Origin: Podarcis erhardii
Lineage: Eukaryota
Reading direction: 5' to 3' (one strand)
Length of the DNA: 64,000 nucleotides
Assembly (NCBI GenBank): GCA_964252035.1
Contig: OZ176200.1
Under the pieces are notes generated by a model. It ran no database searches. It was not told the origin of the DNA and worked only from the letters and a program-made list of their open reading frames with translations. Shown here one piece after another: positions 4,531 to 37,062 of the stretch; the stretch's first letter is position 1, and each line of letters begins with the position of its first letter. The position numbers were made by a program, and so were the translations under genes.

Positions 4531-6758
4531 TAGTAGTAGTAGTAATAGTATTCATGGTACTTTGTTGACATTGCAGTTTGATTCAGGGTCAGGTAAAATA
4601 ACCCCAAATTAAATCTATTGCCCTGTTATTTGGGACCCAGCAGAGGAATCAAATAGGGGACACCAACCATCTGCTCATTCCCTAAGACAGTGACAATTCC
4701 ATGCATTTTAACATGTAATTGCCCCAGTCTGTAGAAAGAAGGAGGTAGGGTCTGATTTTAACAGCAAAAAAGGTGCCCAAATGAGAGGATGTGAGCCCTT
4801 TCCTTTCCAGAAGCTTCTCTGTCCAAATGTTGGGAGAATATAGCTTTAGAAGAGGGGTTAGCTTTGGGAGGAGGGTAGAGATGCCATCAAGCAGAGTTCA
4901 GGGCTAGAAGCCTAATGCCCAGAATCTAAAACTGCAGAACTGCACCACTTGAGGAGGGACTGTTTGATACTACATCCACACAAGCCATTTACCTTTGAAA
5001 TTGGAACCCCACCTCTTTGTTCATGATTGGGGCACTTCCATGTTTAAGTACAGGGAAATAGTGGCATTGCTTCTGGTTTGACACATATAAGGACAGTGGT
5101 CAAATAGGTGGCACACATCTACAGGATACAGAGAAAGGGGCAGCAGACATTGTATGGAATCCCCTACCCCAGTATTGACTATTGATTTGCATATGCATTT
5201 GGAGGAGGGGGATATTATGGGTTAGTACAGCTCCAAGGGAGCTGAGCTATGGGAGATCATTTTAAATGCTTATCTGGATCAGCCCACCAAACAATATAAT
5301 CAAATAGAAGTTCTCTGGTCTCCATTGTTCACGCTAGCCTCTACATTCTGCAGGCAGTCCAAGTGGCATTCACCAAGAAAGTAATTACCCAGTTTGGCAC
5401 CCGTCTGTACATTTTGTTGCAGCAAAACGGCTTTACATGCCAAATATTTAGATGGGAAGGAAAATAAAACATGTTTAATTAAAGCTGCTATTGTATTTTG
5501 TATTCTCTGTTGTGCCTGCATTTTGGAATACACCCTTCAGTACTATTACTCAAAAGACCGATTCCCATATGTGCTGAGAGACTTTTAATTAGACAGAGTA
5601 TTCCAATATGCGGCAGTTTGGCAAAATGTTTCTTATTTCCACTACATCCATCTGCAAATAAGTGCCACAAAAATCACATCTCTTCGTCACTGTGTTGTGC
5701 TTGGATTGGAGGGATGGCAGCATCCTCACTTTCTTTTGCAATAAGTGCATGTACTTATTTACAAGGAAATAGCACAAAGACAGGGAAATAATTGAAACTG
5801 ATGCTGCTACACAGGAAATATTTAAGCAAGTGCCTTATGAAAGCAGGGAGAGAGTCACTGTTGTTTTGGAAACTCAGAGTCAGATTATGCAGAGAATGAG
5901 AGATTCCTAAGACAGTCAGATATTAATCATATTCATACTTCTTCCATTATTACATGGAGCTAGGGATCACACTTTATTCTCAACACAACCCAGTAGGGTA
6001 GGCCAAGCTCAGAGACAGTGGTTTGCTCAAGGCTGCAGCTTCACAGCTAAGCAGGAATTTGAACTCTGGTTTCTCCAGTGCATAACACCACTCCTCATTA
6101 TTGGGTGCCTCATTATTTAGAAACAGGTTCACATAAATTAGCTGGGCAAAAGTAGACCATGCTTTGCCATTGCGGATAAATATTGTTATGCCTTGGCTGA
6201 ACACTGTGCCTTTTAAACAAAGGCACACTAGGTTTTATCTGCCTAGGCTTTTTCATACAAAATAATTTTGTTGTTTTATTACTATTGGTTTTATTGGTCC
6301 TGGTTTTTATTGTCTTTACTGCATCTCCTATTGTTTTATTTGTTTTCTGTTGTTTATTGGCTATAATGTTGTTTTTATTGTTTATTTTAATATTATGGTA
6401 CACCACATTATAAATTTTTAATTGAAAGGCAGGGTAAATGAGTTTAAAAATGAATAAATAAGTGTGTCTGCTTTGTGGATTAGCAAACAACAATAAGAAC
6501 AACAACAAAAGAATATTGTGAAATCTTAAAGACTGATTTAGTGGGCAAGATTTTATCATTTATCAGATGTAGATTAGGTAGCATTCAAGTGGATAGCTCT
6601 GTAATATATATATTGTATCTGCTGATCATGTGCAAATGGAGAGTTGCCTGTATTACATGATATACTAATGTTTTCCACACACTAATCTGGAACTACAAAA
6701 GCTATATATATTTTTCCTAGTTATAATGCACAGGATCCTTAGGCTGCATTCCTAGTAT

Positions 6759-6828
6759 CATCATCATCTTCTTCTTCTTCTTCTTCTTCTTCTTCTTCTT
6801 CTTCTTCTTCTTCTTCTTCTTCTTCTTC
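6759..6828. repeat. (TCA)n(TCT)n microsatellite forming the RTE 3' tail
   Basis: Seen directly. Confidence 0.95.
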
Positions 6829-6934
6829 TGTGATCACTTGTAGCCAAGTAAGATTGTCTTCCATGAACACGGTCTTAACAGTGAGTCTGTAAGTGACTGT
6901 GGAGGCCAATTCTGGATCCACATGTCCTTCCACA

Positions 6935-7748
6935 CAGTGGCGTAGCGTGGGGGGTGCAAGGGGGGCCGGCCGCACCGGGCGCAACTTCTGGGGGGGGGCC
7001 GCACTCGCTGCCTCCGGAGTCGCCGAGGAGCCGCTGCCTGCCATGCCGCCCTGGCTGCTTCAGCCGCGTCCGACAGCCGGCTCGAGGTTCCTTCCGGCCG
7101 GGTCTCCCGACGGGGCGCTGCGGGCGGAGGCTCCGGCACCAAGCGCCACGCCGCCCAGGCTCGGGTCGCTGTCTGGACGCGCGTAGCCCGCCAAATGCGC
7201 CACCGGCGGCGAATGAAGCGCCCAGCCAGAGCCACCTGCGCTCTAGTGCCTGCGCGCCAAGACCGCCCACCCGCCCCGACGGGGCCCACCCACCCGCGCC
7301 GGAGGCCGGCCGACGCACTGGCCCCAGAGGCGCCCCCTCCCCGCGCCAGAAAGAAGCCGCGTTGGGGCTAGCCGGGCCGGGGAGGGAGACCGAGAAGGCT
7401 GCGCCGCGACGCCCAAAGACGCGCGTCTTGGCGCAAAGGGGCCCGCGGCACTCAGACGCGGAAGGGACCCTCTCCCCCTGACCCACCACTGAACTGCAAT
7501 TCCCAGCTCCCTTGGCAAATCCCAGTCCCCAATCCCCAAGATGCTTTATTTGAGGCAGGGGTCCTTTAATTGCAAAAACAACACTACGGAGGGCAGTAGT
7601 CACCACGGAGTTTGCCCCAGAGTAGAGCCGTCAGTATTAATGACCATGGTTAGGGGGTAGGGGGCGCAAGTTACTTGCCTTGCCCCAGGTTAGGGGGCGC
7701 AAATTACTTGCCTTGCCCCTGGTGCTGACAACCCACGCTACGCCGCTG
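6935..7748. mobile_element. Non-autonomous hAT-type DNA transposon, 814 bp, with GC-rich cargo
   Basis: TIRs CAGTGGCGTAGCGTGGG / CCCACGCTACGCCGCTG (1 mismatch); perfect 8-bp TSD CTTCCACA at 6927-6934 and 7749-7756; ends shared with 34901-35068. Confidence 0.92.
6998..7490 (-). promoter_or_regulatory. CpG-island/promoter-like cargo inside the hAT element
   Basis: Very CpG-rich; GC boxes CCGCCC at 7263 and 7271; ETS core CCGGAAG (minus) at 7091-7097; ATG in strong Kozak context GGCGGCATGG at 7042-7044. Function is inferred. Confidence 0.45.
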
Positions 7749-8544
7749 CTTCCACAGTGGGGATATAGGTTTCTGGGTGGGAGTTGATCACAGTGAGGGT
7801 TTGCTAAATGTGCATTCCTTTTAGCACATTTCTCCCTTTTGTCCTGAGTTTAAACGTCTTCAAAGTCTATGACACCTTTGGTAAAGGCTGTTCTCCAATT
7901 GGAGCGCTCACAGGCCAGTGTTTCCCAGTTGTCGGTGTTTATACTACATTTTTAAAGATTTGCCTTGAGAGCATCTTTAAACCTCTCTTGTTGACTACCA
8001 GCATTATGCTTCCCTTTTTTTTAGTTCGGAATAGAGTAGTTGCTTTGAAAGACGATAATCAGGCATCTGAACAATATGACCAGTCCAACGAAGTTGATGT
8101 TGAAGAATCATTGCTTCGACATTGGTGATCTTTGTTTCTTCCAGTACACTGGCATTAGTTTGCCTGTCTTCCCAAGTGATGTGTAAAAATTTTCAGAGAC
8201 ACCACTGATGGATTCTTTCATGGAGTTGGAGATGGCATTTATAAGTGGTCCATGTTTCACAAGCATACAGTAAGGTTGGTAGTACAATAGCTTTGTAAAC
8301 AAGCATTTTGGTTTCCCTGCAAATGTCCTGGTCCTCGGGCACTCTGTACTACAATTGGGAGAAAGCTGCAGTTGCAGAGCTCAGGCAATGCTGGATTTTG
8401 GCATCAATGTCAGCCTTTGTGGAAAGATAACCGCCCAGGTAAGAGAAGTGATCAACACTTTCCAACATTACACTATTGAGTTGCATTTGTGGTGCTGCAG
8501 AGGGGTTGTTTTGTGCTTGTTGGATGTTGAGCAACATTCCTAGT

Positions 8545-8745
8545 ATACACATTTATTTGGGAGCAAGCCGCCTTGAACTCAGTGGAGCTTGCTTCTGAGT
8601 AGACATGTATAGGATTGTGCTGGAAGGGTTGTATTTGACAAAGCCCTGCTCAGACTCATTGAAATCAATGGACCCTAATTAGTAATGACTAATTTAAGTC
8701 TATTGATTTCAATGGGTCTACTCTGAGCATAACTTAGTCAGATGC
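8545..8745. repeat. Two short palindromic dispersed repeats (about 80-100 bp each)
   Basis: Imperfect inverted arms (GAGCAAG...CTTGCTTC; CCATTGAAATCAAT-like...ATTGATTTCAATGG); related copies near 11885-11965, 27895-27965, 31555-31650, 53860-53990 and 63815-63880. Confidence 0.6.
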
Positions 8746-8943
8746 AGTCCTAATTGTTGTGATTACCACTTCTTTGTTGTCCATCTTGATGATTTGTAAG
8801 AACTGTGCCCTTAAAGGCAGTCTATAAGTAAGAATACAAATTGAATGAAAAATATGTTATATCCTTATATTTTTAAATAGGTTTTTAGTATGCAAAACCT
8901 GACAATGTACAAAGGACTTTTTTGGGCTACAATCCCAACCAAG

Positions 8944-12734: not shown

Positions 12735-13919
12735 TGTGAAGTCTCATTTTCCCCTACCGGATTTCCCTGTTTAAATTTACAATACGTTTAACTGAAACAC
12801 ATTTTTGATGTGTCTAGATCCAGCCTATGTCAGAGAAGCTGATAATCACTTGGTAAATTCAGAACAATTCATAAAAAAACAGCAACCAGCTTATTTTGGA
12901 AGCAGTACTTTTTTTACTCACAAAACATACAAGCGTTGTGCTTTAGGAAAGCAACAACTTGTAAGCTTTATAGTCACAGATGCCTTATTACTGCAGTGCT
13001 ACTACCTCCACTGCTAGCTTTTTTTGGCAGGGAGGGGAGGGAGAAACTCCCCTTTCACAGCAATCTGCTGCTGCTAAGTACAGAATTCAAAAGGCCTGTC
13101 ATCAATCTTGATACTCCCCATAAAAAACGCCAGGATGATTTGCTTGTACGAGACCACATGAGATGAAACCTACAGCTTTCCAAATGCATGTGCAAACAAA
13201 TGATGAGGGATGACATGCCATCATCTCCCCGTGTAGATGTGTGCTGTCATTTGCTTCCTATAGTGGCAACAGCATGACTGTACAAACAAGCAATGGAGTA
13301 AAACCTATAGTGAGCTGTGTGCCTACACTGGAAATCACAGGTTTGCTGTGATTATGGTTATCATTGCTAAGAAGGGGGCAAGCCTGGGATGAAGGAAGAT
13401 GTGCAGTGTGAGACATATCTGCATCTATTAGAGATTATATGAAGCGAGGAGGTCTTACAAGAGACACTGATTCTAACCTGTAGAATCTAAGCTGGTCAGG
13501 GTGAGGTGGTGACATGTGATTTTCCAGGTGTCGCTGTACATTTCCTAACCTTTGGCCATTCTGGTTGGTGTTGATGGGAGTTAGAGTCCAACTACATGTG
13601 GAAGGCCACAGGTTTCCCACCACTGATCAAAGCTATTGTCTCTTGCTATTTTTGCACTGCCAGATGTTTGTGCTGCAGCTGTCTCCAGCCACGGCATGTT
13701 GTCCCATGGTGACTTCTCAAGATGAAACTTCAAAGTTTCACATTTTACTTAATGTTCTATCAATATAGCTGGCAAAGAAACACACGTACACACAAGGGCA
13801 GTAACGCAGTGTTTCCCAACCGGTGTTCCGCGGCACACTAGTGTGCCGCGAGACGTTGCCTGGTGTGCCGTGGGAGGGAGGCGGGCGAGAGCGCAAGGCT
13901 TGGGGCGGCAGCTGGCAGC

Positions 13920-14360
13920 GCGGAGCACGGGGCGCCCTTCGGAGGGCTCCGCGTGCTTCGGGCAACAGGCTGCCGCCCCAAGCCTTGCGCGCCCGGCGGG
14001 AGCTCCTGCCGGGCGCGCAAGCCTTGCAGACACTCGCCCGAAGCACGGGGAGCCCTCCGGAGGGCTCCCTGTGCTTCGGGCAACAGGCTGCCGCCTCAAG
14101 CCTTGCGCGCCCGGCGGGAGCTCCTGCCAGGCGCGCAAGGCTTGCAGACACTCGCCCGAAGCACGGGGAGCCCTCCGGAGGGCTCCCTGTGCTTCGGGCA
14201 ACAGGCTGCCGCCCCAAGCCTTGCGCGCCCGGCGGGAGCTCCTGCCGGGCGCGCAAGCCTTGCAGACACTCGCCCGAAGCACGGGGAGCCCTCCGGAGGG
14301 CTCCCCGTGCTTCGGGCAACAGGCTGCCGCCCCAAGCCTTGCGCACCCGGCGGGAGCTCC
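13920..14360. repeat. 118-bp GC-rich tandem repeat, about 3.7 copies
   Basis: GCTTCGGGCAAC recurs at 13955, 14073, 14191 and 14309. Confidence 0.93.
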
Positions 14361-15517
14361 GCGCGGGGCAGACATCTACAGCTTAGGGAGCCCTGCAGGA
14401 CTTCCCCGCAGGGCTCTCCAAGCTGCGGATAGCAGCCTGCTGCCCCGCACGAGGGGCGCTCTTAAGCAGAGCGCCCCTTGGGCGGGGCAGACATCTGCAG
14501 CTTGGGGAGCCCTGCAGGACTTCCCCGCAGGGCTCTCCAAGCTGCGGATAGCAGCCTGCTGCCCCGCACGAGGGGTGCTCTTAAGCAGAGCGCCCCTCGC
14601 GCGGGGCAGACATCTGCAGCTTGGGGAGCCCTGCAGGACTTCCCCGCAGGGCTTTCCAAGCTGCGGATAGCAGCCTGCTGCCCCCCACGAGGGGTGCTCT
14701 TAAGCAGAGCGCCCCTTGGGCGGGGCAGACATCTGCAGCTTGGGGAGCCCTGCAGGACTTCCCCGCAGGGCTTTCCAAGCTGCGGATAGCAGCCTGCTGC
14801 CCCGCACGAGGGGTGCTCTTAAGCAGAGCGCCCCTTGGGCGGGGCAGACATCTGCAGCTTGGGGAGCCCTGCAGGACTTCCCCGCAGGGCTCTCCAAGCT
14901 GCGGATAGCAGCCTGCTGCCCCGCACGAGGGGTGCTCTTAAGCAGAGCGCCCCTCGCGCGGGGCAGACATCTGCAGCTTGGGGAGCCCTGCAGGACTTCC
15001 CCGCAGGGCTTTCCAAGCTGCGGATAGCAGCCTGCTGCCCCCCACGAGGGGTGCTCTTAAGCAGAGCGCCCCTTGGGCGGGGCAGACATCTGCAGCTTGG
15101 GGAGCCCTGCAGGACTTCCCCGCAGGGCTTTCCAAGCTGCGGATAGCAGCCTGCTGCCCCGCACGAGGGGCGCTCTTAAGCAGAGCGCCCCTTGGGCGGG
15201 GCAGACATCTGCAGCTTGGGGAGCCCTGCAGGACTTCCCCGCAGGGCTTTCCAAGCTGCGGATAGCAGCCTGCTGCCCCCCACGAGGGGTGCTCTTAAGC
15301 AGAGCGCCCCTTGGGCGGGGCAGACATCTGCAGCTTGGGGAGCCCTGCAGGACTTCCCCGCAGGGCTCTCCGAGCTGCAGATAGCAGCCTGCTGCCCTGC
15401 ACGAGGGGCGCTCTTAAGCAGAGCGCCCCTCGCGCGGGGCAGACATTAACAGCTTGGAGAGCCCTGCAGGACTTCCCCGCAGGGCTCTCCAAGCTGCGGA
15501 TAGCAGCCTGCTGCCCC
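14361..15517. repeat. 119-bp GC-rich tandem repeat, about 9.7 copies
   Basis: GACAT of GCAGACATC recurs at 14371, 14490, 14609 and every 119 bp to 15442. Confidence 0.95.
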
Positions 15518-15867
15518 GGACCTGTCCTAAAGGCTTGCAGCGGGAGGAGGGCTTTCCTCCCCACCGCCAACATTCAGAATGCTGTTCTGAATGTTGGCGG
15601 TGGGGAGGAAAAACCCTCCTCCCACCGCAAGCCCCGGGAAGAGAGGAGAAGCTGTGCGCCTTTTCTTCTGTTCCCGGACCTCCCACCGCAAGCCTTCAGG
15701 ACAGGTCCCAGAACAGAGGGGAAGGCGCGCAGCTTCTCCTCTCTTCCCGGGGCTTGCGGTGGGAGGAGGGTTTTTCCTCCCCACCGCCAACATTCAGAAC
15801 AGCATTCTGAATGTTGGCGGTGGGGAGGAAAGCCCTCCTCCCGCCGCAGGCCTTCAGGACAGGTCCG
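15517..15867. repeat. Long inverted repeat whose arms each contain a palindrome
   Basis: Arms at about 15517-15673 and 15711-15867; each contains CCGCCAACATTCAGAA-N5-TTCTGAATGTTGGCGG. Confidence 0.88.
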
Positions 15868-15946
15868 GGAACAGAGGGGAAGGTGCGCAGCTTCTCCTCT
15901 GTTCCCAGGGCTTGCGGTGGGAGGAGGGTTCCCCGCTGTCCCGGAG

Positions 15947-16082
15947 ATTTCCCTATGGGCTTTCGTCTTGCGAAGCAAGCCCATAGGGAAATTCGTCTTG
16001 CGAAGCCGCTAAAAAATCGGAAAACCCTTTCGTCTTGCGGGTTTTTCGTTTAGCGAGGCATTCGTCTTGCGGGGCACCACTG
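15947..16082. mobile_element. Single end of a Tc1/mariner (Tigger-like) MITE nested in the hAT element
   Basis: Ends CATTCGTCTTGCGGGGCACCACTG followed by TA; four TCGTCTTGCG repeats; TTTCCCTATGGGC...GCCCATAGGGAAA hairpin; the matching other TIR was not found. Confidence 0.7.
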
Positions 16083-17356
16083 TACTTTATATATAGTCAA
16101 TATAGGCACAGAGTTAATTTTTTAAACATTTTCTAATGGTGGTGTGCCTCGAGATTTTTTTCATGAAACAAGTGTGCCTTTGCCCAAAAAAGGTTGGGAA
16201 ACACTGCAGTAACGAATGGCAACTTGACGGATGTGACCACGTGCTCCTATGGCAAATCTGTTGCAGGACTGATTCAGGCTGCAAGTGGAGGGCTGCATGT
16301 TTAATAACATCTCGTGTTAAAAACACCTTGCACATTCAAAACTATGTATCAAGAAAACTCTTAGACTAGAACATTTTTACATTACATGTTCATGCAGGGA
16401 CTTCTTTAAAAAAATGTGAGGAGCCATTTATTTCTTGATTGTTAAAAAAATAGAGGCTCAGGCTGTCTTGTATTTGATATATGGGACAAGAGTAAGCACT
16501 TGGCTTTCTCATAAATCCCCTTGAAAGGGAATGTAAAACACATATTTAGTCTATGTGGACTTGCTCCTACATCTCTTTTTGGCTTGAAGATAAGCATAAG
16601 CGCTTTGAGAAAGGGTACAATTTTTTGTTATCATTTGCAGTTTGGGTGGTTCAAACATATGAGAAAGCTTGGACACCTCTTTTTAATGAGTTTGATGTCT
16701 GATTGGTTTCAATCAGTAGCTCATGGATATATGTTCAGAAGACAGAACTGACTTCCACACAAGAATTTAAGAAATTTTTATTGGATTGTCTTCTCATGAT
16801 ATCGCTGAGGAATTTTGCTTCTACAAATTCCACTCCAGTAAAAACACATATTCTAGCAAAGATAATTTTCTTGTTGCATGATGTAGTAGAAAGGAAAAAC
16901 TAAGAGAGGGATTTATATTTATAGCACAAGTCTACCCATGCCTACTTAAAAAGTAAGTGCCATGGAGTTCGCTGGGGCCTACTTCACAACAATGGACATA
17001 CACATACTTTATTCCCTCTGGTTATAGCTGGATGGTGTGGATAAACCAGCCACAAAAAAACACATAAACATGCCAGGCAACTGAGATCATAATGCAAGGT
17101 CATTCTCTGAATGCTCTGTCTTTGGATGGTCGGAAGGTGGCTAATGTGTAGAGGCACTGAGATTATGGAATCCTTTGCCCACTGAAGTTAGTCTATCACC
17201 ATCTGTAGTGTGGTTTAGATGGCAGCTCAGAACTTGGTTGTTCCAGCAAGTCTTTTCTTGAAAGTGACCCATACTGTATTTCAGTGAAGTTTTCATTCAT
17301 TCATTGTTTTATTCTTTTTGCAAACCATGTTGAGGTTTCATTAAGCAGTATTTGCG

Positions 17357-32450: not shown

Positions 32451-34900
32451 ACAAACACAAATAATGCTTATAAAATTATTCTGCAGAAACATAGTAACAC
32501 ATAATGTATTTTTGACATAATTATGCATATAATTGGTTGGCCTTTAAAAAAAAATGAAACAAAACCAGCAATCCACAAGCAACTCGGACATAAGTGGGCA
32601 CATAAGTGGGCACCATCAGGAGGTGGTCCAAGGTAGGCAAAGCTTGATTAGGTTAGAACTAGAAACTTCCATGTATAAACCCATTTTAAATGGATTACTC
32701 TTCCATACCTACCAGAAACTACTGATTTCAGCATGGTGGTTGTAACATACGTCCTCACTCACCTGACTAAACTGACTGAAGATGAGCCTTGTAATACTGG
32801 CTGGCTCTGTGCCATGATGAATAGTATAGTATATGATGGCCTTGAAAAAAAAATTCTTTCTTTCTTTTAAAAATCATGTGTAGGTGGGCTTTTTTCTTTT
32901 TTTATTCTAACCTCTTCATCTTAGAAAGATGTTTTTAGAAGATTAGTTGTAAAATTAGATATTGATTTCTCAGAGTTAAGGATGGGGAAGGCAGCATCAA
33001 TCCAGCTGCATTAACTATGAAACTGATTGTGCTGATAAACGCATGATTCTGGTTTCCTGCTTTGCTTTATTATTTGAAGAACTTCTTCTTCACTGATGCC
33101 ATTAAGAAAATTATAGCCGTATCATGTACATGACAGGCAAAGCTCCTATTGTTAGCACTCAGCAGGGAACAAACTCCCTGTAACTAGGATAATGCAGCAT
33201 CCTTAGCAGAACAAGCAATATCCATTGTCTCTGCAATCCTCCAACATTTGCAAGGGCTTTCGCCTTTCTGTAACTTGCTAAACTTGCATACTATCTGGGA
33301 AGGGAAGTTGGACCAAACTTCATTTCTGACTTTGGTTCTCAAAAGCACAGATTAAAGATAGCCATTGTGAACAAAACAGGTATTTGAAAAGTGCTGGGTA
33401 ATTAGCATCATCTGCATAATTAGCTCCATTGAAAAGCTATCTCCATGCATCAGTATTAGAGCTATGTCAAGCAAGTAGAACTAGCTGCTGATTATTTTGA
33501 CAGCAATTAAAATTCAATTGCTTCTTATATATGTTATGACGGTGGTATCTCAAGGTGGTATAGATAGAGAAGTACATGGATTAATATGCCAGTGCTGTTG
33601 CATTGTTTTGCACCAGGTAATGCTTGACTAGGTCTGTGGTGACGCCAGTTTTGTGTTCTTCTATTTGTAATTAATTGTGCCTTATGGTATGGTATGCTAT
33701 TTGTGTTGATTCTGATCCGCAGTGAAGAGAGGGATAGACTGCATTATTACATCCTTAAATGTTTTAGATAAATAAAATAACCAGGTGTTGCTGGCACAGA
33801 TCAATGGAATGACATGCTCTTCAAAGAGAGGTGCACATATAATTTACATTACTGCAGGTGCCTGTTCTACAATATATGTAGCATGACAGTAGATTTGCAA
33901 TTTCTAACATTAGTAAAATTTAACTCCATGAGTCTGAGAAACAATCATAATTAAAACTTCGCTTGAGGGGGCAAGCCCACCTTGGAATTTATTTGAAATT
34001 ATCTGAATTCCATGCAGCTCTTAACTCACCCAGCACACATCTGCAGGGTGTCTTAACATACACACCAAATAAACATGCCTGAGGCTTTGCCATGCAGTGC
34101 TTCTTCCCCAGCTGTGCAGGACTGATTCAACCAAGCAGGTAGGATAGATAGTTGCCTGGAGCCATTTAATTAAAGGAATGTTCTTCATACCAGAAGCAGG
34201 GTCCCAGCTGAGGTTCCATGCTGCATTTAGCATAGCTGGCTACCCTTGCAAAGTGAGTGCATTCCAGAATGACGAATGTGATCCCAATTTTTGTGTGGAG
34301 GCCCTTGGGTGGTACTGGAGATGGGCAGCCTTTATATCAGGCACCGTGATGTTTGCATGGAAGTGCTTTAGGGAAGAATCATGTGCCTTTTTCCATCTTT
34401 GCCTGGGTAGCTGCCATGGATGCATGCCCTACTGCCATCCTGTTAAAATTTAGTAGTATTGCTGTGGATTAAGCAGCCGTCTTATTTCTTCAACATCCAA
34501 AGATAAAGATCACTCCCTCCAATAGCAAACTTAAGTAGTGAGTGCTAACAGGATCACAACCAAAATGGGGCCATTTGAAAAACCTCAATGCTTGGGAAGA
34601 GCCTGAAGGTTGCAGACAAGCAACAGCAACAATATTTTCTAAAAACTTTAAGAGAGAGACTCCTGCAACAGCTTGATGCAGTGAGCATGTTCAGTAGTCA
34701 TTGCATGCTGGAAAAAGGAAACTGAAAAAGGGGCAGCGGAATGCCCTGCTTGAGCTCCTGACAACATAACCTGGAGGAGGGCATGGTGGTTGGCTGGAAC
34801 CCTAAATGGAAGCACTCCTGCTAGTGTTGGAAGCAGTGGGATGCAATTCTGCTTGTACTGAAGACTGGTGTGTCTGTATGGGAAAGAGTAGATAGAAGAA

Positions 34901-35068
34901 CAGTGGCGTAGCGTGGGTTGTCAGCACCCGGGGCAAGGCAAGTAATTTGCGCCCCCTAACCCGTGGATTTACGCCCCCTAACCCATGGATTTGCGCCCCT
35001 AACCCTAACCCCCAGATGTTGCGCCCGGTGCAGCCGGCCCCCCCTGCACCCCCCACGCTACGCCACTG
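34901..35068. mobile_element. hAT-type MITE, 168 bp; short sibling of 6935-7748 in opposite orientation
   Basis: Perfect TIR CAGTGGCGTAGCGTGGG / CCCACGCTACGCCACTG; perfect TSD TAGAAGAA at 34893-34900 and 35069-35076. Confidence 0.95.
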
Positions 35069-37062
35069 TAGAAGAAGCTCCAAGTTTCATAGACTGTCCT
35101 TTCTGACCTAACCTCAACTTCTGCTGAGTAGTTTAATTCCAAATACCAATAGCTAGGAGGTGAGGTTACAGGGTAATATTTGGCTGCAGATCTCTCTTGT
35201 ACTCATCAATCCATATCTTTATTGAAGAGTGATGAGCTGTTGTAATACTTGGAAATGTACAAGATAGGGAAAAGTAGAGGTGTGAGGTGGAAAAGGTGTG
35301 GTGTGGACCTAAATTTTTCATCAGAATACCTGCTGAGCCTTCAGAATCCCAAGCACCATTTTAACTTTTGAACATCCTGGATTTATATGCAGCATCCACA
35401 AGTAAGTGAGAGAAGAGGGATGCTGATAACTTTTCTCCAATACAGGAGACTTTGCTGGCCATGTGCAACAGCCCTACTGTATCAGTGAAGTCTCCAGAAT
35501 GAGGGTGAAATTGCACCATATTCCAGTAGGTTTCCAGCCAGAACCATAGATTTCTTTCCAAATGATGCATGTAGCATCTCTAATCAAAACTCATAGTAGA
35601 AGCAGAGCAGTTTGCTGCTCCTTATTAATACCAGATAATGCCTTTTCACTGACAACATTTAGAGTTGTTTATAACTATTTCTTAATAAGCAGTCTCATAA
35701 GGCATAACCTAGTTTTCAGTGAGCAATTGCCTTTATTATTTGACAGGTTAATTTTCTGCTGCTGCCTTAAAAGAGCATTCCTTCTATTGCACCACCTTTT
35801 GATCTCTGCTACAGTAAATAGAAGAGGCACATACATAATTGAGCAACAGCAACCACCGCTATTTGGGAGTTTCTGCTTCATCCCTGTGTACAGTGTGAAG
35901 GGGGGAGCTATTAAATTAGAGTCACCGCTGGTGGTACCTCAGATCCCAGCACCAGGCAACTGTCTTTGGTAGAGCTGCAAGGGCCCTCTCTTCCTGCCCC
36001 ACCCCTTGTGCAAGATTCTGTGGTGAGTTGTGAAAGCAGATCAGCAACATCCTCCGCTGAAAGTACGTGATTTGAGGTGCATGACCTGTGGCTTTGGGCT
36101 ACATGTGGCATGCATCCTAATTTCATGTGGCTCTAGGGAGTGGGTGGGAGTGAATATCATACACACACTCAAACACACACTATTTCTCCCTCTCCCTTTC
36201 TTGCATATGGGGTAGCTCTGATCCCTCCCAATGCTAGCATGTGCTCCAGAGAGATTAGTTCCAAGGGACTGCAGCCCTCAATGTGAGGGTGGGGAAAAAG
36301 TTGTCCACCCCTGTGATACAGAGTTTCTGAGAAGTGTTCTGGCTAGTTTTGCTCTGCTTACCAAGAAATCTTTACTGAGATAACATGTGAAAGTCCCTCC
36401 TTGTATGTCTTTCTTTCTAGGTTTCATGTCATGCAGAGGAGAATAATAAGCAGAGCATCACTTCATTTATTTTCTTCCTTTTTCCTTTGTATGTTGACAT
36501 AGACCTAAGAAGACCATTAACCGGTTCTGAGGATGCCTTCTGTCTGAGCATGTGTGGGATTCAGCAGAGTTTGTGGTTCCTGTCCATTGTATAAATGTCC
36601 CAAGATACCTCAGCCAAACATTACAGATGATCATTATTTCAAGCCGGCGGCCTATTTCCATACAGCCCTGCTCCTTTTATAAAACATGAAGTGCGCTGCT
36701 CTTGACCTGAGTCAAGAAGGATTCCCAGGGAACAGCTCAGTATACACAAAGCAGTGTTACAGGTTTAAAGTAGCAGTGTGCCAGTGAACACGCTGAATGG
36801 AAGGTTTTCAATTTTTAATAGCCCAAGTTCAAATTATGCCTGCAGCCATAACAACAAGGGGCTTTGTTCTTGTCAGATCTAGCAAGCTGAAGAGAATCAA
36901 GTTGGCTTAGTGGGTGAATCAGAAATCTCAAAGAAACATTCAGGTTGCAGAACAAGTGACATGCGTCATTCGATGGCTGCCACTCTTCCCTTTTGAGCCC
37001 AGTCAGTGCCACCACACTTGTTCACAGCCAAGGGGTTCCTTGTTGCTAAAGCTGCTGAATGA

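What the first reader, a model, noticed from the sequence alone, without database searches (positions are those of the whole stretch)
6935..7748. Pack-type hAT element carrying a probable captured promoter and first exon
Seen: the 814-bp element shares both ends with the 168-bp MITE at 34901-35068, but the sibling's short interior is replaced by about 645 bp (roughly 6998-7643) of unrelated DNA. On the minus strand this cargo reads as a moderate-GC flank, then a CpG island with two GC boxes and an ETS core (CCGGAAG), then a strong-Kozak ATG (7044) beginning MAGSGSSATPEAASAA. It is cut off at the transposon end. TIRs and TSD are essentially intact, so the loaded element appears to have moved as a unit. 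Known: TIR elements that capture host fragments are described as Pack-MULEs in plants and Pack-TIRs in animals. Inferred: this is a mobile promoter cassette copied from a host gene's 5' end.
Basis: partly seen in the sequence, partly recalled or inferred. Interest (0 to 1): 0.7.

Follow-up and report, generated by a model that had tools for sequence, protein, structure and literature searches.

The report
Lizard hAT transposon carrying foreign CpG island
A small cut-and-paste (hAT) transposon in a wall-lizard-type genome has picked up about 650 bases of foreign, promoter-like DNA and then multiplied to roughly 10-35 copies; this is a known but rare event in vertebrates, and the source gene could not be named.

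Summary
At 6935-7748 lies an 814-bp element with a perfect 8-bp target duplication (CTTCCACA) and 16-bp inverted ends. It shares 60 and 61 terminal bases (95-97%) with the 168-bp MITE at 34901-35068. Between them sit about 650 bp (6995-7643) of unrelated DNA: GC 0.69, CpG o/e 0.91, against 0.43 and 0.24 for the window.

Public contigs add three things.
- The loaded element is multicopy, at roughly 10-35 times unique depth in two lizard species. The cargo/right-end junction is present at that same depth.
- A 1698-nt contig from a third species matches only 7016-7568, at about 98%, and runs on unlike the window on both sides. This is a candidate TIR-less parent.
- This copy carries nine private C>T/G>A changes, five of them at CpG, so it is probably methylated and decaying.

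Raw single-cell RNA reads gave zero depth on the cargo. No transposase, Pfam or Rfam match was found.

The Pack-type capture reading is partly supported. The "promoter plus first exon" part stays unproven: only about 10 codons are shared with the TIR-less contig, and the donor gene was not identified. The scan has already reported other Pack-hAT elements in this same genome, carrying GNAL, ATP1B3 and CENPW cargo. I class this as a new member of a known kind, of moderate interest.

The parts
6927..6934 (.). Left copy of the 8-bp target-site duplication, CTTCCACA
   Evidence: In one search, joints 6926>7749 have 8 letters fitting both sides.
6935..6994 (+). Left end shared with the MITE family. 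It includes the 16-bp TIR CAGTGGCGTAGCGTGG at 6935-6950.
   Evidence: 95% to 35068-35009.. In one search, the loose end at 6994 continues as TTAGGG..., the normal MITE interior, in X1 and X16.
6995..7015 (-). 21 bp of cargo with no match to the MITE or to the TIR-less contig. On the minus strand it holds the codons 'EAASAA..'. It may be filler, or donor sequence that has diverged in the other species.
   Evidence: the X16 record 12 alignment stops at 7016..
7016..7568 (-). Core cargo of 553 bp, homologous to a TIR-less 1698-nt contig of another lizard species. It holds the CpG island (7045-7470), the GC boxes, the ETS core and the minus-strand ATG at 7044-7042.
   Evidence: table 8, record 12: 11 other letters, plus a GCCGCC insertion after 7029 and a CCC insertion after 7356..
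7569..7643 (-). 75 bp of cargo absent from the TIR-less contig but contiguous with the core cargo in the multicopy form in species A and B. Origin unknown.
   Evidence: X1 record 4 spans 7217-7648 and X3 record 18 spans 7468-7681. X16 depth falls after 7568; no significant match elsewhere in the window.
7644..7748 (+). Right end shared with the MITE family. It includes a tandem duplication of a 33-bp subterminal unit (7658-7723) and the right TIR at 7733-7748 (15 of 16 bases).
   Evidence: 96.7% to 34961-34901, and a second copy at 91.9%. (I3).
7749..7756 (.). Right copy of the target-site duplication, CTTCCACA
34901..35068 (-). 168-bp sibling MITE of the same family, in opposite orientation, with its own TSD TAGAAGAA at 34893-34900 and 35069-35076.
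6832..8748 (.). High-copy repeat into which the element is inserted, interrupted at 6935-7756. Summed word depth is roughly 10^3 to 10^5 times the unique depth seen at 8749-8940, falling to a few hundred times in its last ~200 bp.
   Evidence: table 2. The loose end at 6934 reads GTGGGGACATAGG..., which is 7757 onward.

Best explanation
This is a non-autonomous hAT element of a very abundant lizard MITE family. The family's short interior has been replaced by about 650 bp of foreign genomic DNA.

The central 553 bp (7016-7568) comes from a locus that exists without transposon ends in a related species. On the minus strand the cargo reads as follows:
- a CpG-poor stretch with AATAAA and ATTAAA signals;
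- a 426-bp CpG island with GC boxes and an ETS core;
- the first ATG in 600 nt, followed by about 10-16 codons.

Inferred mechanism, steps not shown:
- The fragment was copied in by template switching during repair or replication of a MITE (gap filling or FoSTeS-type), which left short unexplained filler at both junctions.
- The chimera kept both ends, so a hAT transposase supplied in trans could move it.
- It multiplied to roughly 10-35 copies in at least two species.

The copy in this window landed inside another high-copy repeat and made an 8-bp duplication. It has since gained about 1.6% private C>T/G>A changes, enriched at CpG. It is therefore most likely methylated and silent, not a working promoter.
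For: - Structure, TSD, TIR and shared ends.
- Foreign interior with CpG-island composition.
- No ATG on the minus strand in the 600 nt upstream of ATG 7044. Expected 3.6, P=0.0075 by dinucleotide shuffles.
- Multicopy. Cargo contigs have depth 208-294 in X1 against 10.9-13.2 for unique flank contigs. In X3 they have 815-1283 against 67.4.
- Contigs X1 record 4 (7217-7648) and X3 record 18 (7468-7681) run from cargo into the right end at that same depth.
- TIR-less relative. X16 record 12 is 1698 nt and aligns only over 7016-7568 (record positions 394-955). It continues 393 nt and 743 nt unlike the window.
- After removing the window's private changes, that contig differs from the multicopy consensus by about 3 substitutions and 2 in-frame-length indels.
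- Paralogous empty sites with 8 shared letters: joints.
- No transposase, Pfam or Rfam match.
- Private decay pattern: (table 3).
- Other gene-start captures by hAT elements were noted earlier in this same genome. These are unchecked leads.
Against: - The parent was seen only in another species and only as alignment coordinates. Its flanks could not be read, so I cannot show that it is a gene's 5' end or that it is free of transposon sequence nearby.
- The X16 run is only guessed to be RNA.
  - If it is RNA, the contig includes about 900 nt upstream of the ATG, which is odd for a promoter.
  - If it is low-coverage DNA, the contig could itself be a repeat.
- The contig homology stops at 7016 and 7568, inside the cargo, leaving 21 and 75 bp unexplained.
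- The left cargo/TIR junction was not seen in other copies. Contigs there break at 7036-7047.
- Word depth is not a true copy number.
- No RNA reads lay on the cargo in X23.
- A 10-16-codon, Ala/Ser/Gly-rich open frame is not evidence of coding.
Confidence: 0.55

Rival explanations
1. Ds-like deletion derivative. The CpG-rich segment is the family's own promoter, long leader and first transposase codons, inherited from an autonomous or longer hAT parent. An internal deletion then joined codon ~16 to the other end. Nothing was captured from the host.
For: - The layout matches an internally deleted autonomous element: TIR, subterminal repeats, promoter-like DNA, a long ATG-free leader, an ATG, a few codons, then the other end.
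- The form is multicopy.
- The longer contig in species D could be such a parent.
Against: - The longer contig is not colinear with the element beyond 7568 or 7016. It lacks the 180 bp between the core cargo and the right TIR, and the left end, although the shared core is about 99% identical to the multicopy consensus.
- Under this reading two separate deletions would be needed.
- The MITE ends have summed word depth about 2000 times that of the cargo. The sibling MITE shows no trace of the cargo.
- No transposase similarity was found, though only 16 codons are available to test.
Confidence: 0.2
2. The capture is real, but the cargo is not a promoter plus first exon. It is a piece of GC-rich intergenic, intronic, lncRNA or other-repeat DNA, and the ATG and 'Kozak' context are chance.
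For: - Only about 10 codons are shared with the TIR-less contig, and the peptide is low-complexity.
- Two poly(A)-type signals lie upstream on the same strand.
- In the island alone, lack of ATG is expected by chance (P=0.45).
- No RNA depth was seen.
- Another CpG-rich block at about 13.6-16 kb in this window also lies in a hAT-like element, so GC-rich interiors are common here.
Against: - CpG o/e of about 1.0 over 426 bp at GC 0.76 is typical of an unmethylated promoter island in the source.
- GC boxes and an ETS core lie within 250 bp upstream of the only ATG.
- The ATG-free 600 nt is unlikely by chance (P=0.0075).
- The GCCGCC difference in the contig keeps the reading frame.
- Small runs of species D hold the segment in two separate studies while sister runs do not. 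That pattern looks like tissue-dependent expression.
Confidence: 0.2
3. Assembly artefact or chance resemblance of the ends.
For: None found.
Against: - The TIR matches are confined to the four ends.
- Both elements have perfect 8-bp TSDs.
- Independent runs of two species hold the cargo and the cargo/right-end junction.
Confidence: 0.02

Closest known systems
Multicopy Pack-TIRs of animals (Tan et al. 2021, Nat Commun 12:4280, PMC8277862), for example Pack-hAT-N8_XT of the western clawed frog, which carries 291 bp of the CAPSL 5' UTR
   Same: - A non-autonomous hAT element with intact ends and distinct TSDs.
- A few hundred bp of non-TE DNA from a gene's 5' region.
- Moved as a unit after capture.
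- Short unexplained insertions at breakpoints are also described there.
   Different: - The apparent copy number here (about 10-35 by contig depth) is well above the three loci of the frog example. That survey found only 4 multicopy cases among 370.
- The parental locus has not been shown here in the same genome.
Pack-MULEs of plants (rice, maize)
   Same: TIR elements that acquire host gene fragments and amplify them. From my own knowledge, not tested here, Pack-MULEs preferentially acquire GC-rich 5' ends of genes.
   Different: - A different superfamily: Mutator, with 9-10-bp TSDs and long TIRs.
- Plants rather than animals.
- The acquired fragments there are often identifiable exons.
Other Pack-type hAT elements noted by this scan in the same genome, with GNAL-XL, ATP1B3 and CENPW cargo (s1-259082, s1-220624, s1-263131)
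   Same: The same genome, the same kind of short hAT vehicle, cargo described as promoter or 5' UTR plus the first 16-21 codons, and tens or more copies by contig depth. These are AI notes that I did not check.
   Different: - Different cargo. A sequence look-up found no look-alike, and the peptide here does not resemble those proteins' starts as far as I can judge.
- The donor is unnamed here.
Ds-type internal deletion derivatives of autonomous hAT elements (maize Ac/Ds)
   Same: Short non-autonomous elements that keep both ends and part of the 5' leader.
   Different: Here the longer relative is not colinear with the element's subterminal regions, and no transposase sequence is present.

Membership tests
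hAT superfamily, non-autonomous element | 8-bp target-site duplication | tested here: met
   CTTCCACA lies on both sides of 6935-7748, and TAGAAGAA on both sides of the sibling. Empty paralogous sites share 8 letters.
hAT superfamily, non-autonomous element | Short terminal inverted repeats beginning YARNG | tested here: met
   CAGTGGCGTAGCGTGG, matching 15-16 of 16 bases at all four ends. The YARNG rule is from my own knowledge.
hAT superfamily, non-autonomous element | Mobilised by a hAT transposase with BED and hAT dimerisation domains | not testable with these tools
   No autonomous partner lies in the window, and the lizard genome could not be searched.
Pack-TIR (criteria of Tan et al. 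2021) | Both flanking ends cover at least 10 bp of the terminals of one TIR element family | tested here: met
   60 bp and 105 bp of the MITE ends.
Pack-TIR (criteria of Tan et al. 2021) | Internal non-TE sequence of 100-5000 bp | tested here: met
   649 bp (6995-7643), with no match to the MITE, to the rest of the window, to Pfam or to Rfam.
Pack-TIR (criteria of Tan et al. 2021) | A unique parental copy in the same genome at 90% identity or more, with a length ratio of 80-120% | tested here: inconclusive
   A TIR-less contig matches 553 of 649 bp (85%) at about 98%, but it comes from another species. The window's own genome could not be searched.
Pack-TIR (criteria of Tan et al. 2021) | No TE within 100 bp of the parental copy, and not a retrocopy | not testable with these tools
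   The flanks of the 1698-nt contig are not given by read laying. Attempts to fetch the contig failed.
Captured promoter plus first exon | Donor transcription start and start codon lie in the homologous segment of an annotated gene | not testable with these tools
   The 10-16-residue peptide is too short for the protein searches, given their length filter. The donor is unnamed.
Captured promoter plus first exon | Transcription from the cargo | tested here: inconclusive
   Zero depth over 7045-7612 in raw single-cell RNA reads. Only about 6% of that run was read, and it is from species D. Contigs guessed to be RNA hold the TIR-less form.

The most novel reading that the evidence does not exclude
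The huge hAT MITE family of this lizard lineage repeatedly copies unmethylated CpG-island gene starts into itself and then amplifies the chimeras to tens of copies. That would make it a vertebrate counterpart of the 5'-biased, GC-biased acquisition seen in plant Pack-MULEs. This element would be a fourth independent capture, after GNAL, ATP1B3 and CENPW, and some copies might act as dispersed promoters.
Probability: 0.3. Interest if true: 0.7.

Novelty: new member of a known kind. Interest (0 to 1): 0.45.

Why it matters
In a survey of 100 animal genomes, only 4 of 370 Pack-TIRs were multicopy, and the illustrated frog case had three copies (PMC8277862).

A lizard lineage in which a hAT MITE family has several times picked up CpG-island gene starts and spread each to tens of copies would be a natural system for two questions. 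One is how DNA transposons acquire host DNA. The other is whether they scatter promoters and short N-terminal exons through a vertebrate genome.

On its own, this element adds one more such capture. Its donor is unnamed, and this copy looks silenced.

Tried and rejected
1. Fetching the TIR-less contig through its open frames. A word search with the 243-aa frame that stays open across the whole core cargo (window:6875-7606:-) gave no hit. Applying the reported differences in a script shows the frame is also open in the other species' version. The collection therefore does not seem to hold gene calls from those contigs.
2. An exact 30-mer of the cargo in JGI metagenome contigs gave 0 matches.
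3. Rfam on 6700-8900. Nothing lay in the element, so the GC-rich cargo is not a known small-RNA gene.
4. Pfam on the five long ORFs of the element and its flank, and on ten other ORFs of the window. No transposase and no host-gene domain were found. Poly-Glu low-complexity hits were ignored.
5. Earlier scan notes searched by sequence, for both cargo and MITE, came back blank.
6. A sensitive BLAST of 7460-7660 against the rest of the window gave only chance-level matches, so the unexplained 75 bp is not a recognisable fragment of another repeat in the window.
7. Not run: a protein search with the 16-residue N-terminus.
   - The word search accepts only proteins 0.55-1.75 times the query length. 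The longest stop-free reference in that frame is 106 aa.
   - A 10-16-residue low-complexity match would not reach significance in either large search.
   - I judged the cost unjustified.
8. Literature searches for lacertid hAT or Pack elements found nothing specific.

Full report
**Observation**

- The element at 6935-7748 begins CAGTGGCGTAGCGTGG and ends with its inverted complement (15 of 16 bases). It sits between two copies of CTTCCACA, at 6927-6934 and 7749-7756.
- The 168-bp element at 34901-35068 has the same ends and its own duplication, TAGAAGAA.
- The 16-mer occurs only at these four ends in 64 kb at up to 3 mismatches. Shuffles give 0.19 on average.
- BLAST of the element against the window gives 60 bp at 95% and 61 bp at 96.7% to the MITE, inverted, plus a second copy of a 33-bp subterminal unit.
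- Homology to the MITE ends at 6994 and resumes at 7644. In other genomes the common MITE form continues from 6994 as TTAGGG..., and into 7688 from ...GCGCAAATCCACG (loose ends).
- The foreign interior is therefore 6995-7643. It has GC 0.69 and CpG o/e 0.91, against 0.43 and 0.24 for the window. A 426-bp island at 7045-7470 has o/e 0.99.

**Surroundings**

- The element is nested in another repeat. Positions 6832-6934 and 7757-8748 have summed word depths about 10^3 to 10^5 times those of 8749-8940, falling to a few hundred times in the last ~200 bp (table 2).
- Contigs and reads from other copies of that repeat join 6926 to 7749 with 8 letters fitting both sides. The loose end at 6934 reads the sequence found at 7757 onward.
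- These paralogous empty sites fix the insertion boundaries and the 8-bp duplication.
- I found no protein-coding context in the window.

**What the cargo looks like**

- On the minus strand there is no ATG from 7644 down to 7045. Dinucleotide shuffles expect 3.6, P=0.0075. Most of that signal comes from the CpG-poor 174 bp.
- The ATG at 7044 sits in the context GGCGGCATGG, with an in-frame stop five codons upstream.
- GC boxes lie at 7263-7276, 7151-7156 and 7046-7051, and CCGGAAG at 7091-7097.
- AATAAA and ATTAAA lie at 7545-7550 and 7565-7570, upstream of the island on the same strand.
- The cargo matches no Rfam family and no Pfam domain, so it is not a recognisable transposase fragment or small-RNA gene.

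**Evidence from public runs**

The cargo's words are held by runs of five coded organisms in ten studies. No run holds more than 0.60 of them. I laid 6832-8940 on four runs at 90% likeness.

- Species identity. Organism B (X3) matches the unique flank almost perfectly: records 23 and 24 have 0 and 1 differences. It is the window's species or very close to it. Organism A (X1) differs by about 2% there (record 8: 8 letters and 1 gap in 353).
- Copy number in X1. The cargo lies on contigs of depth 208-294, against 10.9-13.2 for unique contigs.
- Copy number in X3. Cargo contigs have depth 815-1283, with bin sums up to 2510, against 67.4.
- Taken together, the cargo stands at roughly 10-35 times unique depth in both. 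The tool warns that this is not a copy number, and GC bias would lower it.
- Cargo joined to the transposon end. X1 record 4 (7217-7648) and X3 record 18 (7468-7681) run unbroken from the cargo to or into the right end at that same depth. The multicopy thing is therefore the loaded element.
- The MITE ends reach about 5-7 x 10^4 times unique depth, so loaded copies are a tiny minority of the family.
- The left junction was not seen. Contigs break at 7036-7047, next to a variable GCC-type repeat.

**A TIR-less relative**

- In run X16 (organism D, guessed to be RNA) a 1698-nt contig of depth 72.9 aligns to the minus strand only over 7016-7568 (its positions 394-955).
- It carries 11 substitutions, a GCCGCC insertion after 7029 and a CCC insertion after 7356. 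It then continues for 393 nt and 743 nt that do not fit the window.
- X16 has no depth on 7569-7612.
- Eight of the ten listed substitutions (one of the 11 is not itemised) are also read by X1 and/or X3, so they are private to the window's copy. The contig differs from the multicopy consensus by about three substitutions and two indels, both multiples of three.
- Two studies of organism D hold this form, while sister runs hold none.
The limits are that it comes from another species, that I could see only coordinates and not its flanks, and that its homology stops inside the cargo. That leaves 21 bp (6995-7015, the 'EAASAA' codons) and 75 bp (7569-7643) unexplained.
- Those two pieces may be filler or second fragments acquired at capture, as described for other Pack-TIRs. 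They may also reflect lineage-specific changes at the parent locus.

**State of this copy**

- Nine positions in the cargo read T or A in the window where the other runs that cover the position read C or G. At 7288 the copies in X3 are mixed. Five of the nine restore a CpG.
- That amounts to about 1.6% private divergence, enriched about fourfold at CpG. It is the signature of germline methylation, not of a protected promoter island.
- Raw single-cell RNA reads of organism D gave zero depth over 7045-7612. The test is weak: only 6% of the run was read, the library is probably 3'-biased, and it is a different species.

**Interpretation**

- The best reading is a multicopy Pack-type hAT element. 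The steps shown are the structure, the foreign interior, the precise insertion, the multiplicity of the loaded form, and the existence of a TIR-less relative.
- The steps inferred are capture by template switching, mobilisation in trans, and the promoter and first-exon nature of the cargo.
- The main rival is a Ds-like deletion derivative of a longer hAT whose own leader this is. It is weakened because the longer contig is not colinear with the element's subterminal regions. It cannot be excluded without reading that contig's flanks.
- A second rival accepts the capture but denies that the cargo is a gene start.

**Comparison with what is known**

- Tan et al. (PMC8277862) found 370 Pack-TIRs in 100 animal genomes, mostly hAT. 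Only four were multicopy; one example is a 291-bp CAPSL 5' UTR fragment moved to three sites.
- Against their criteria, the ends and the internal-length criteria are met. The parental-copy criterion is inconclusive, because the parent is in another species. The TE-free-flank criterion could not be tested.
- The scan has already reported Pack-type hAT elements in this same genome with GNAL, ATP1B3 and CENPW cargo, and tens or more copies. I did not test those notes. They raise the prior for capture and lower the singularity of this case.

**Dead ends**

Attempts to fetch the TIR-less contig by protein words and by an exact DNA word in metagenomes found nothing. The N-terminal peptide is too short for the protein tools. 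The donor gene therefore remains unnamed.

Noticed in passing
window 6767-6829 and 6832-8748: The element sits inside a very high-copy repeat. Its summed word depth is about 10^3 to 10^5 times the unique flank, lower in its last ~200 bp. The repeat abuts a perfect (TCT)21 microsatellite on its left and ends sharply at 8748. I did not determine its class.
   Followed up: partly
window 8652-8719: A 32-nt-arm palindrome (84% complementary, 4-nt loop) lies near the end of that repeat. It gives only sub-threshold miRNA-precursor-like Rfam hits (about 30 bits against gathering scores of 70-100). It is probably a palindromic MITE-type hairpin.
   Followed up: partly
window 13600-16200: This is the only other CpG-rich block in the window (GC 0.58-0.73, CpG o/e 0.67-0.86, many overlapping ORFs on both strands). 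It lacks the CAGTGGCGTAGCGTGG ends, so it belongs to a different family.
   Followed up: no
window 7493-7507 (+): ACTGCAATTCCCAGC lies in the CpG-poor part of the cargo. From memory it resembles the ACTACAATTCCCAGC module of ZNF143/THAP11-type promoter sites. Not tested.
   Followed up: no
window 7545-7550 and 7565-7570 (-): AATAAA and ATTAAA are followed by a G/T-rich stretch just upstream of the CpG island on the minus strand. They could mark the 3' end of a neighbouring gene at the parental locus, which would make the cargo a piece of intergenic DNA spanning two genes.
   Followed up: no
window 6935-6994 and 7644-7748; 34901-35068: The MITE family's ends reach about 5-7 x 10^4 times unique depth in two species. 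Its interior is built of ~22-33-bp units containing CCCTAA/TTAGGG-like motifs. It is probably the 'telomere-motif hAT MITE' family noted elsewhere in this genome by the scan.
   Followed up: partly
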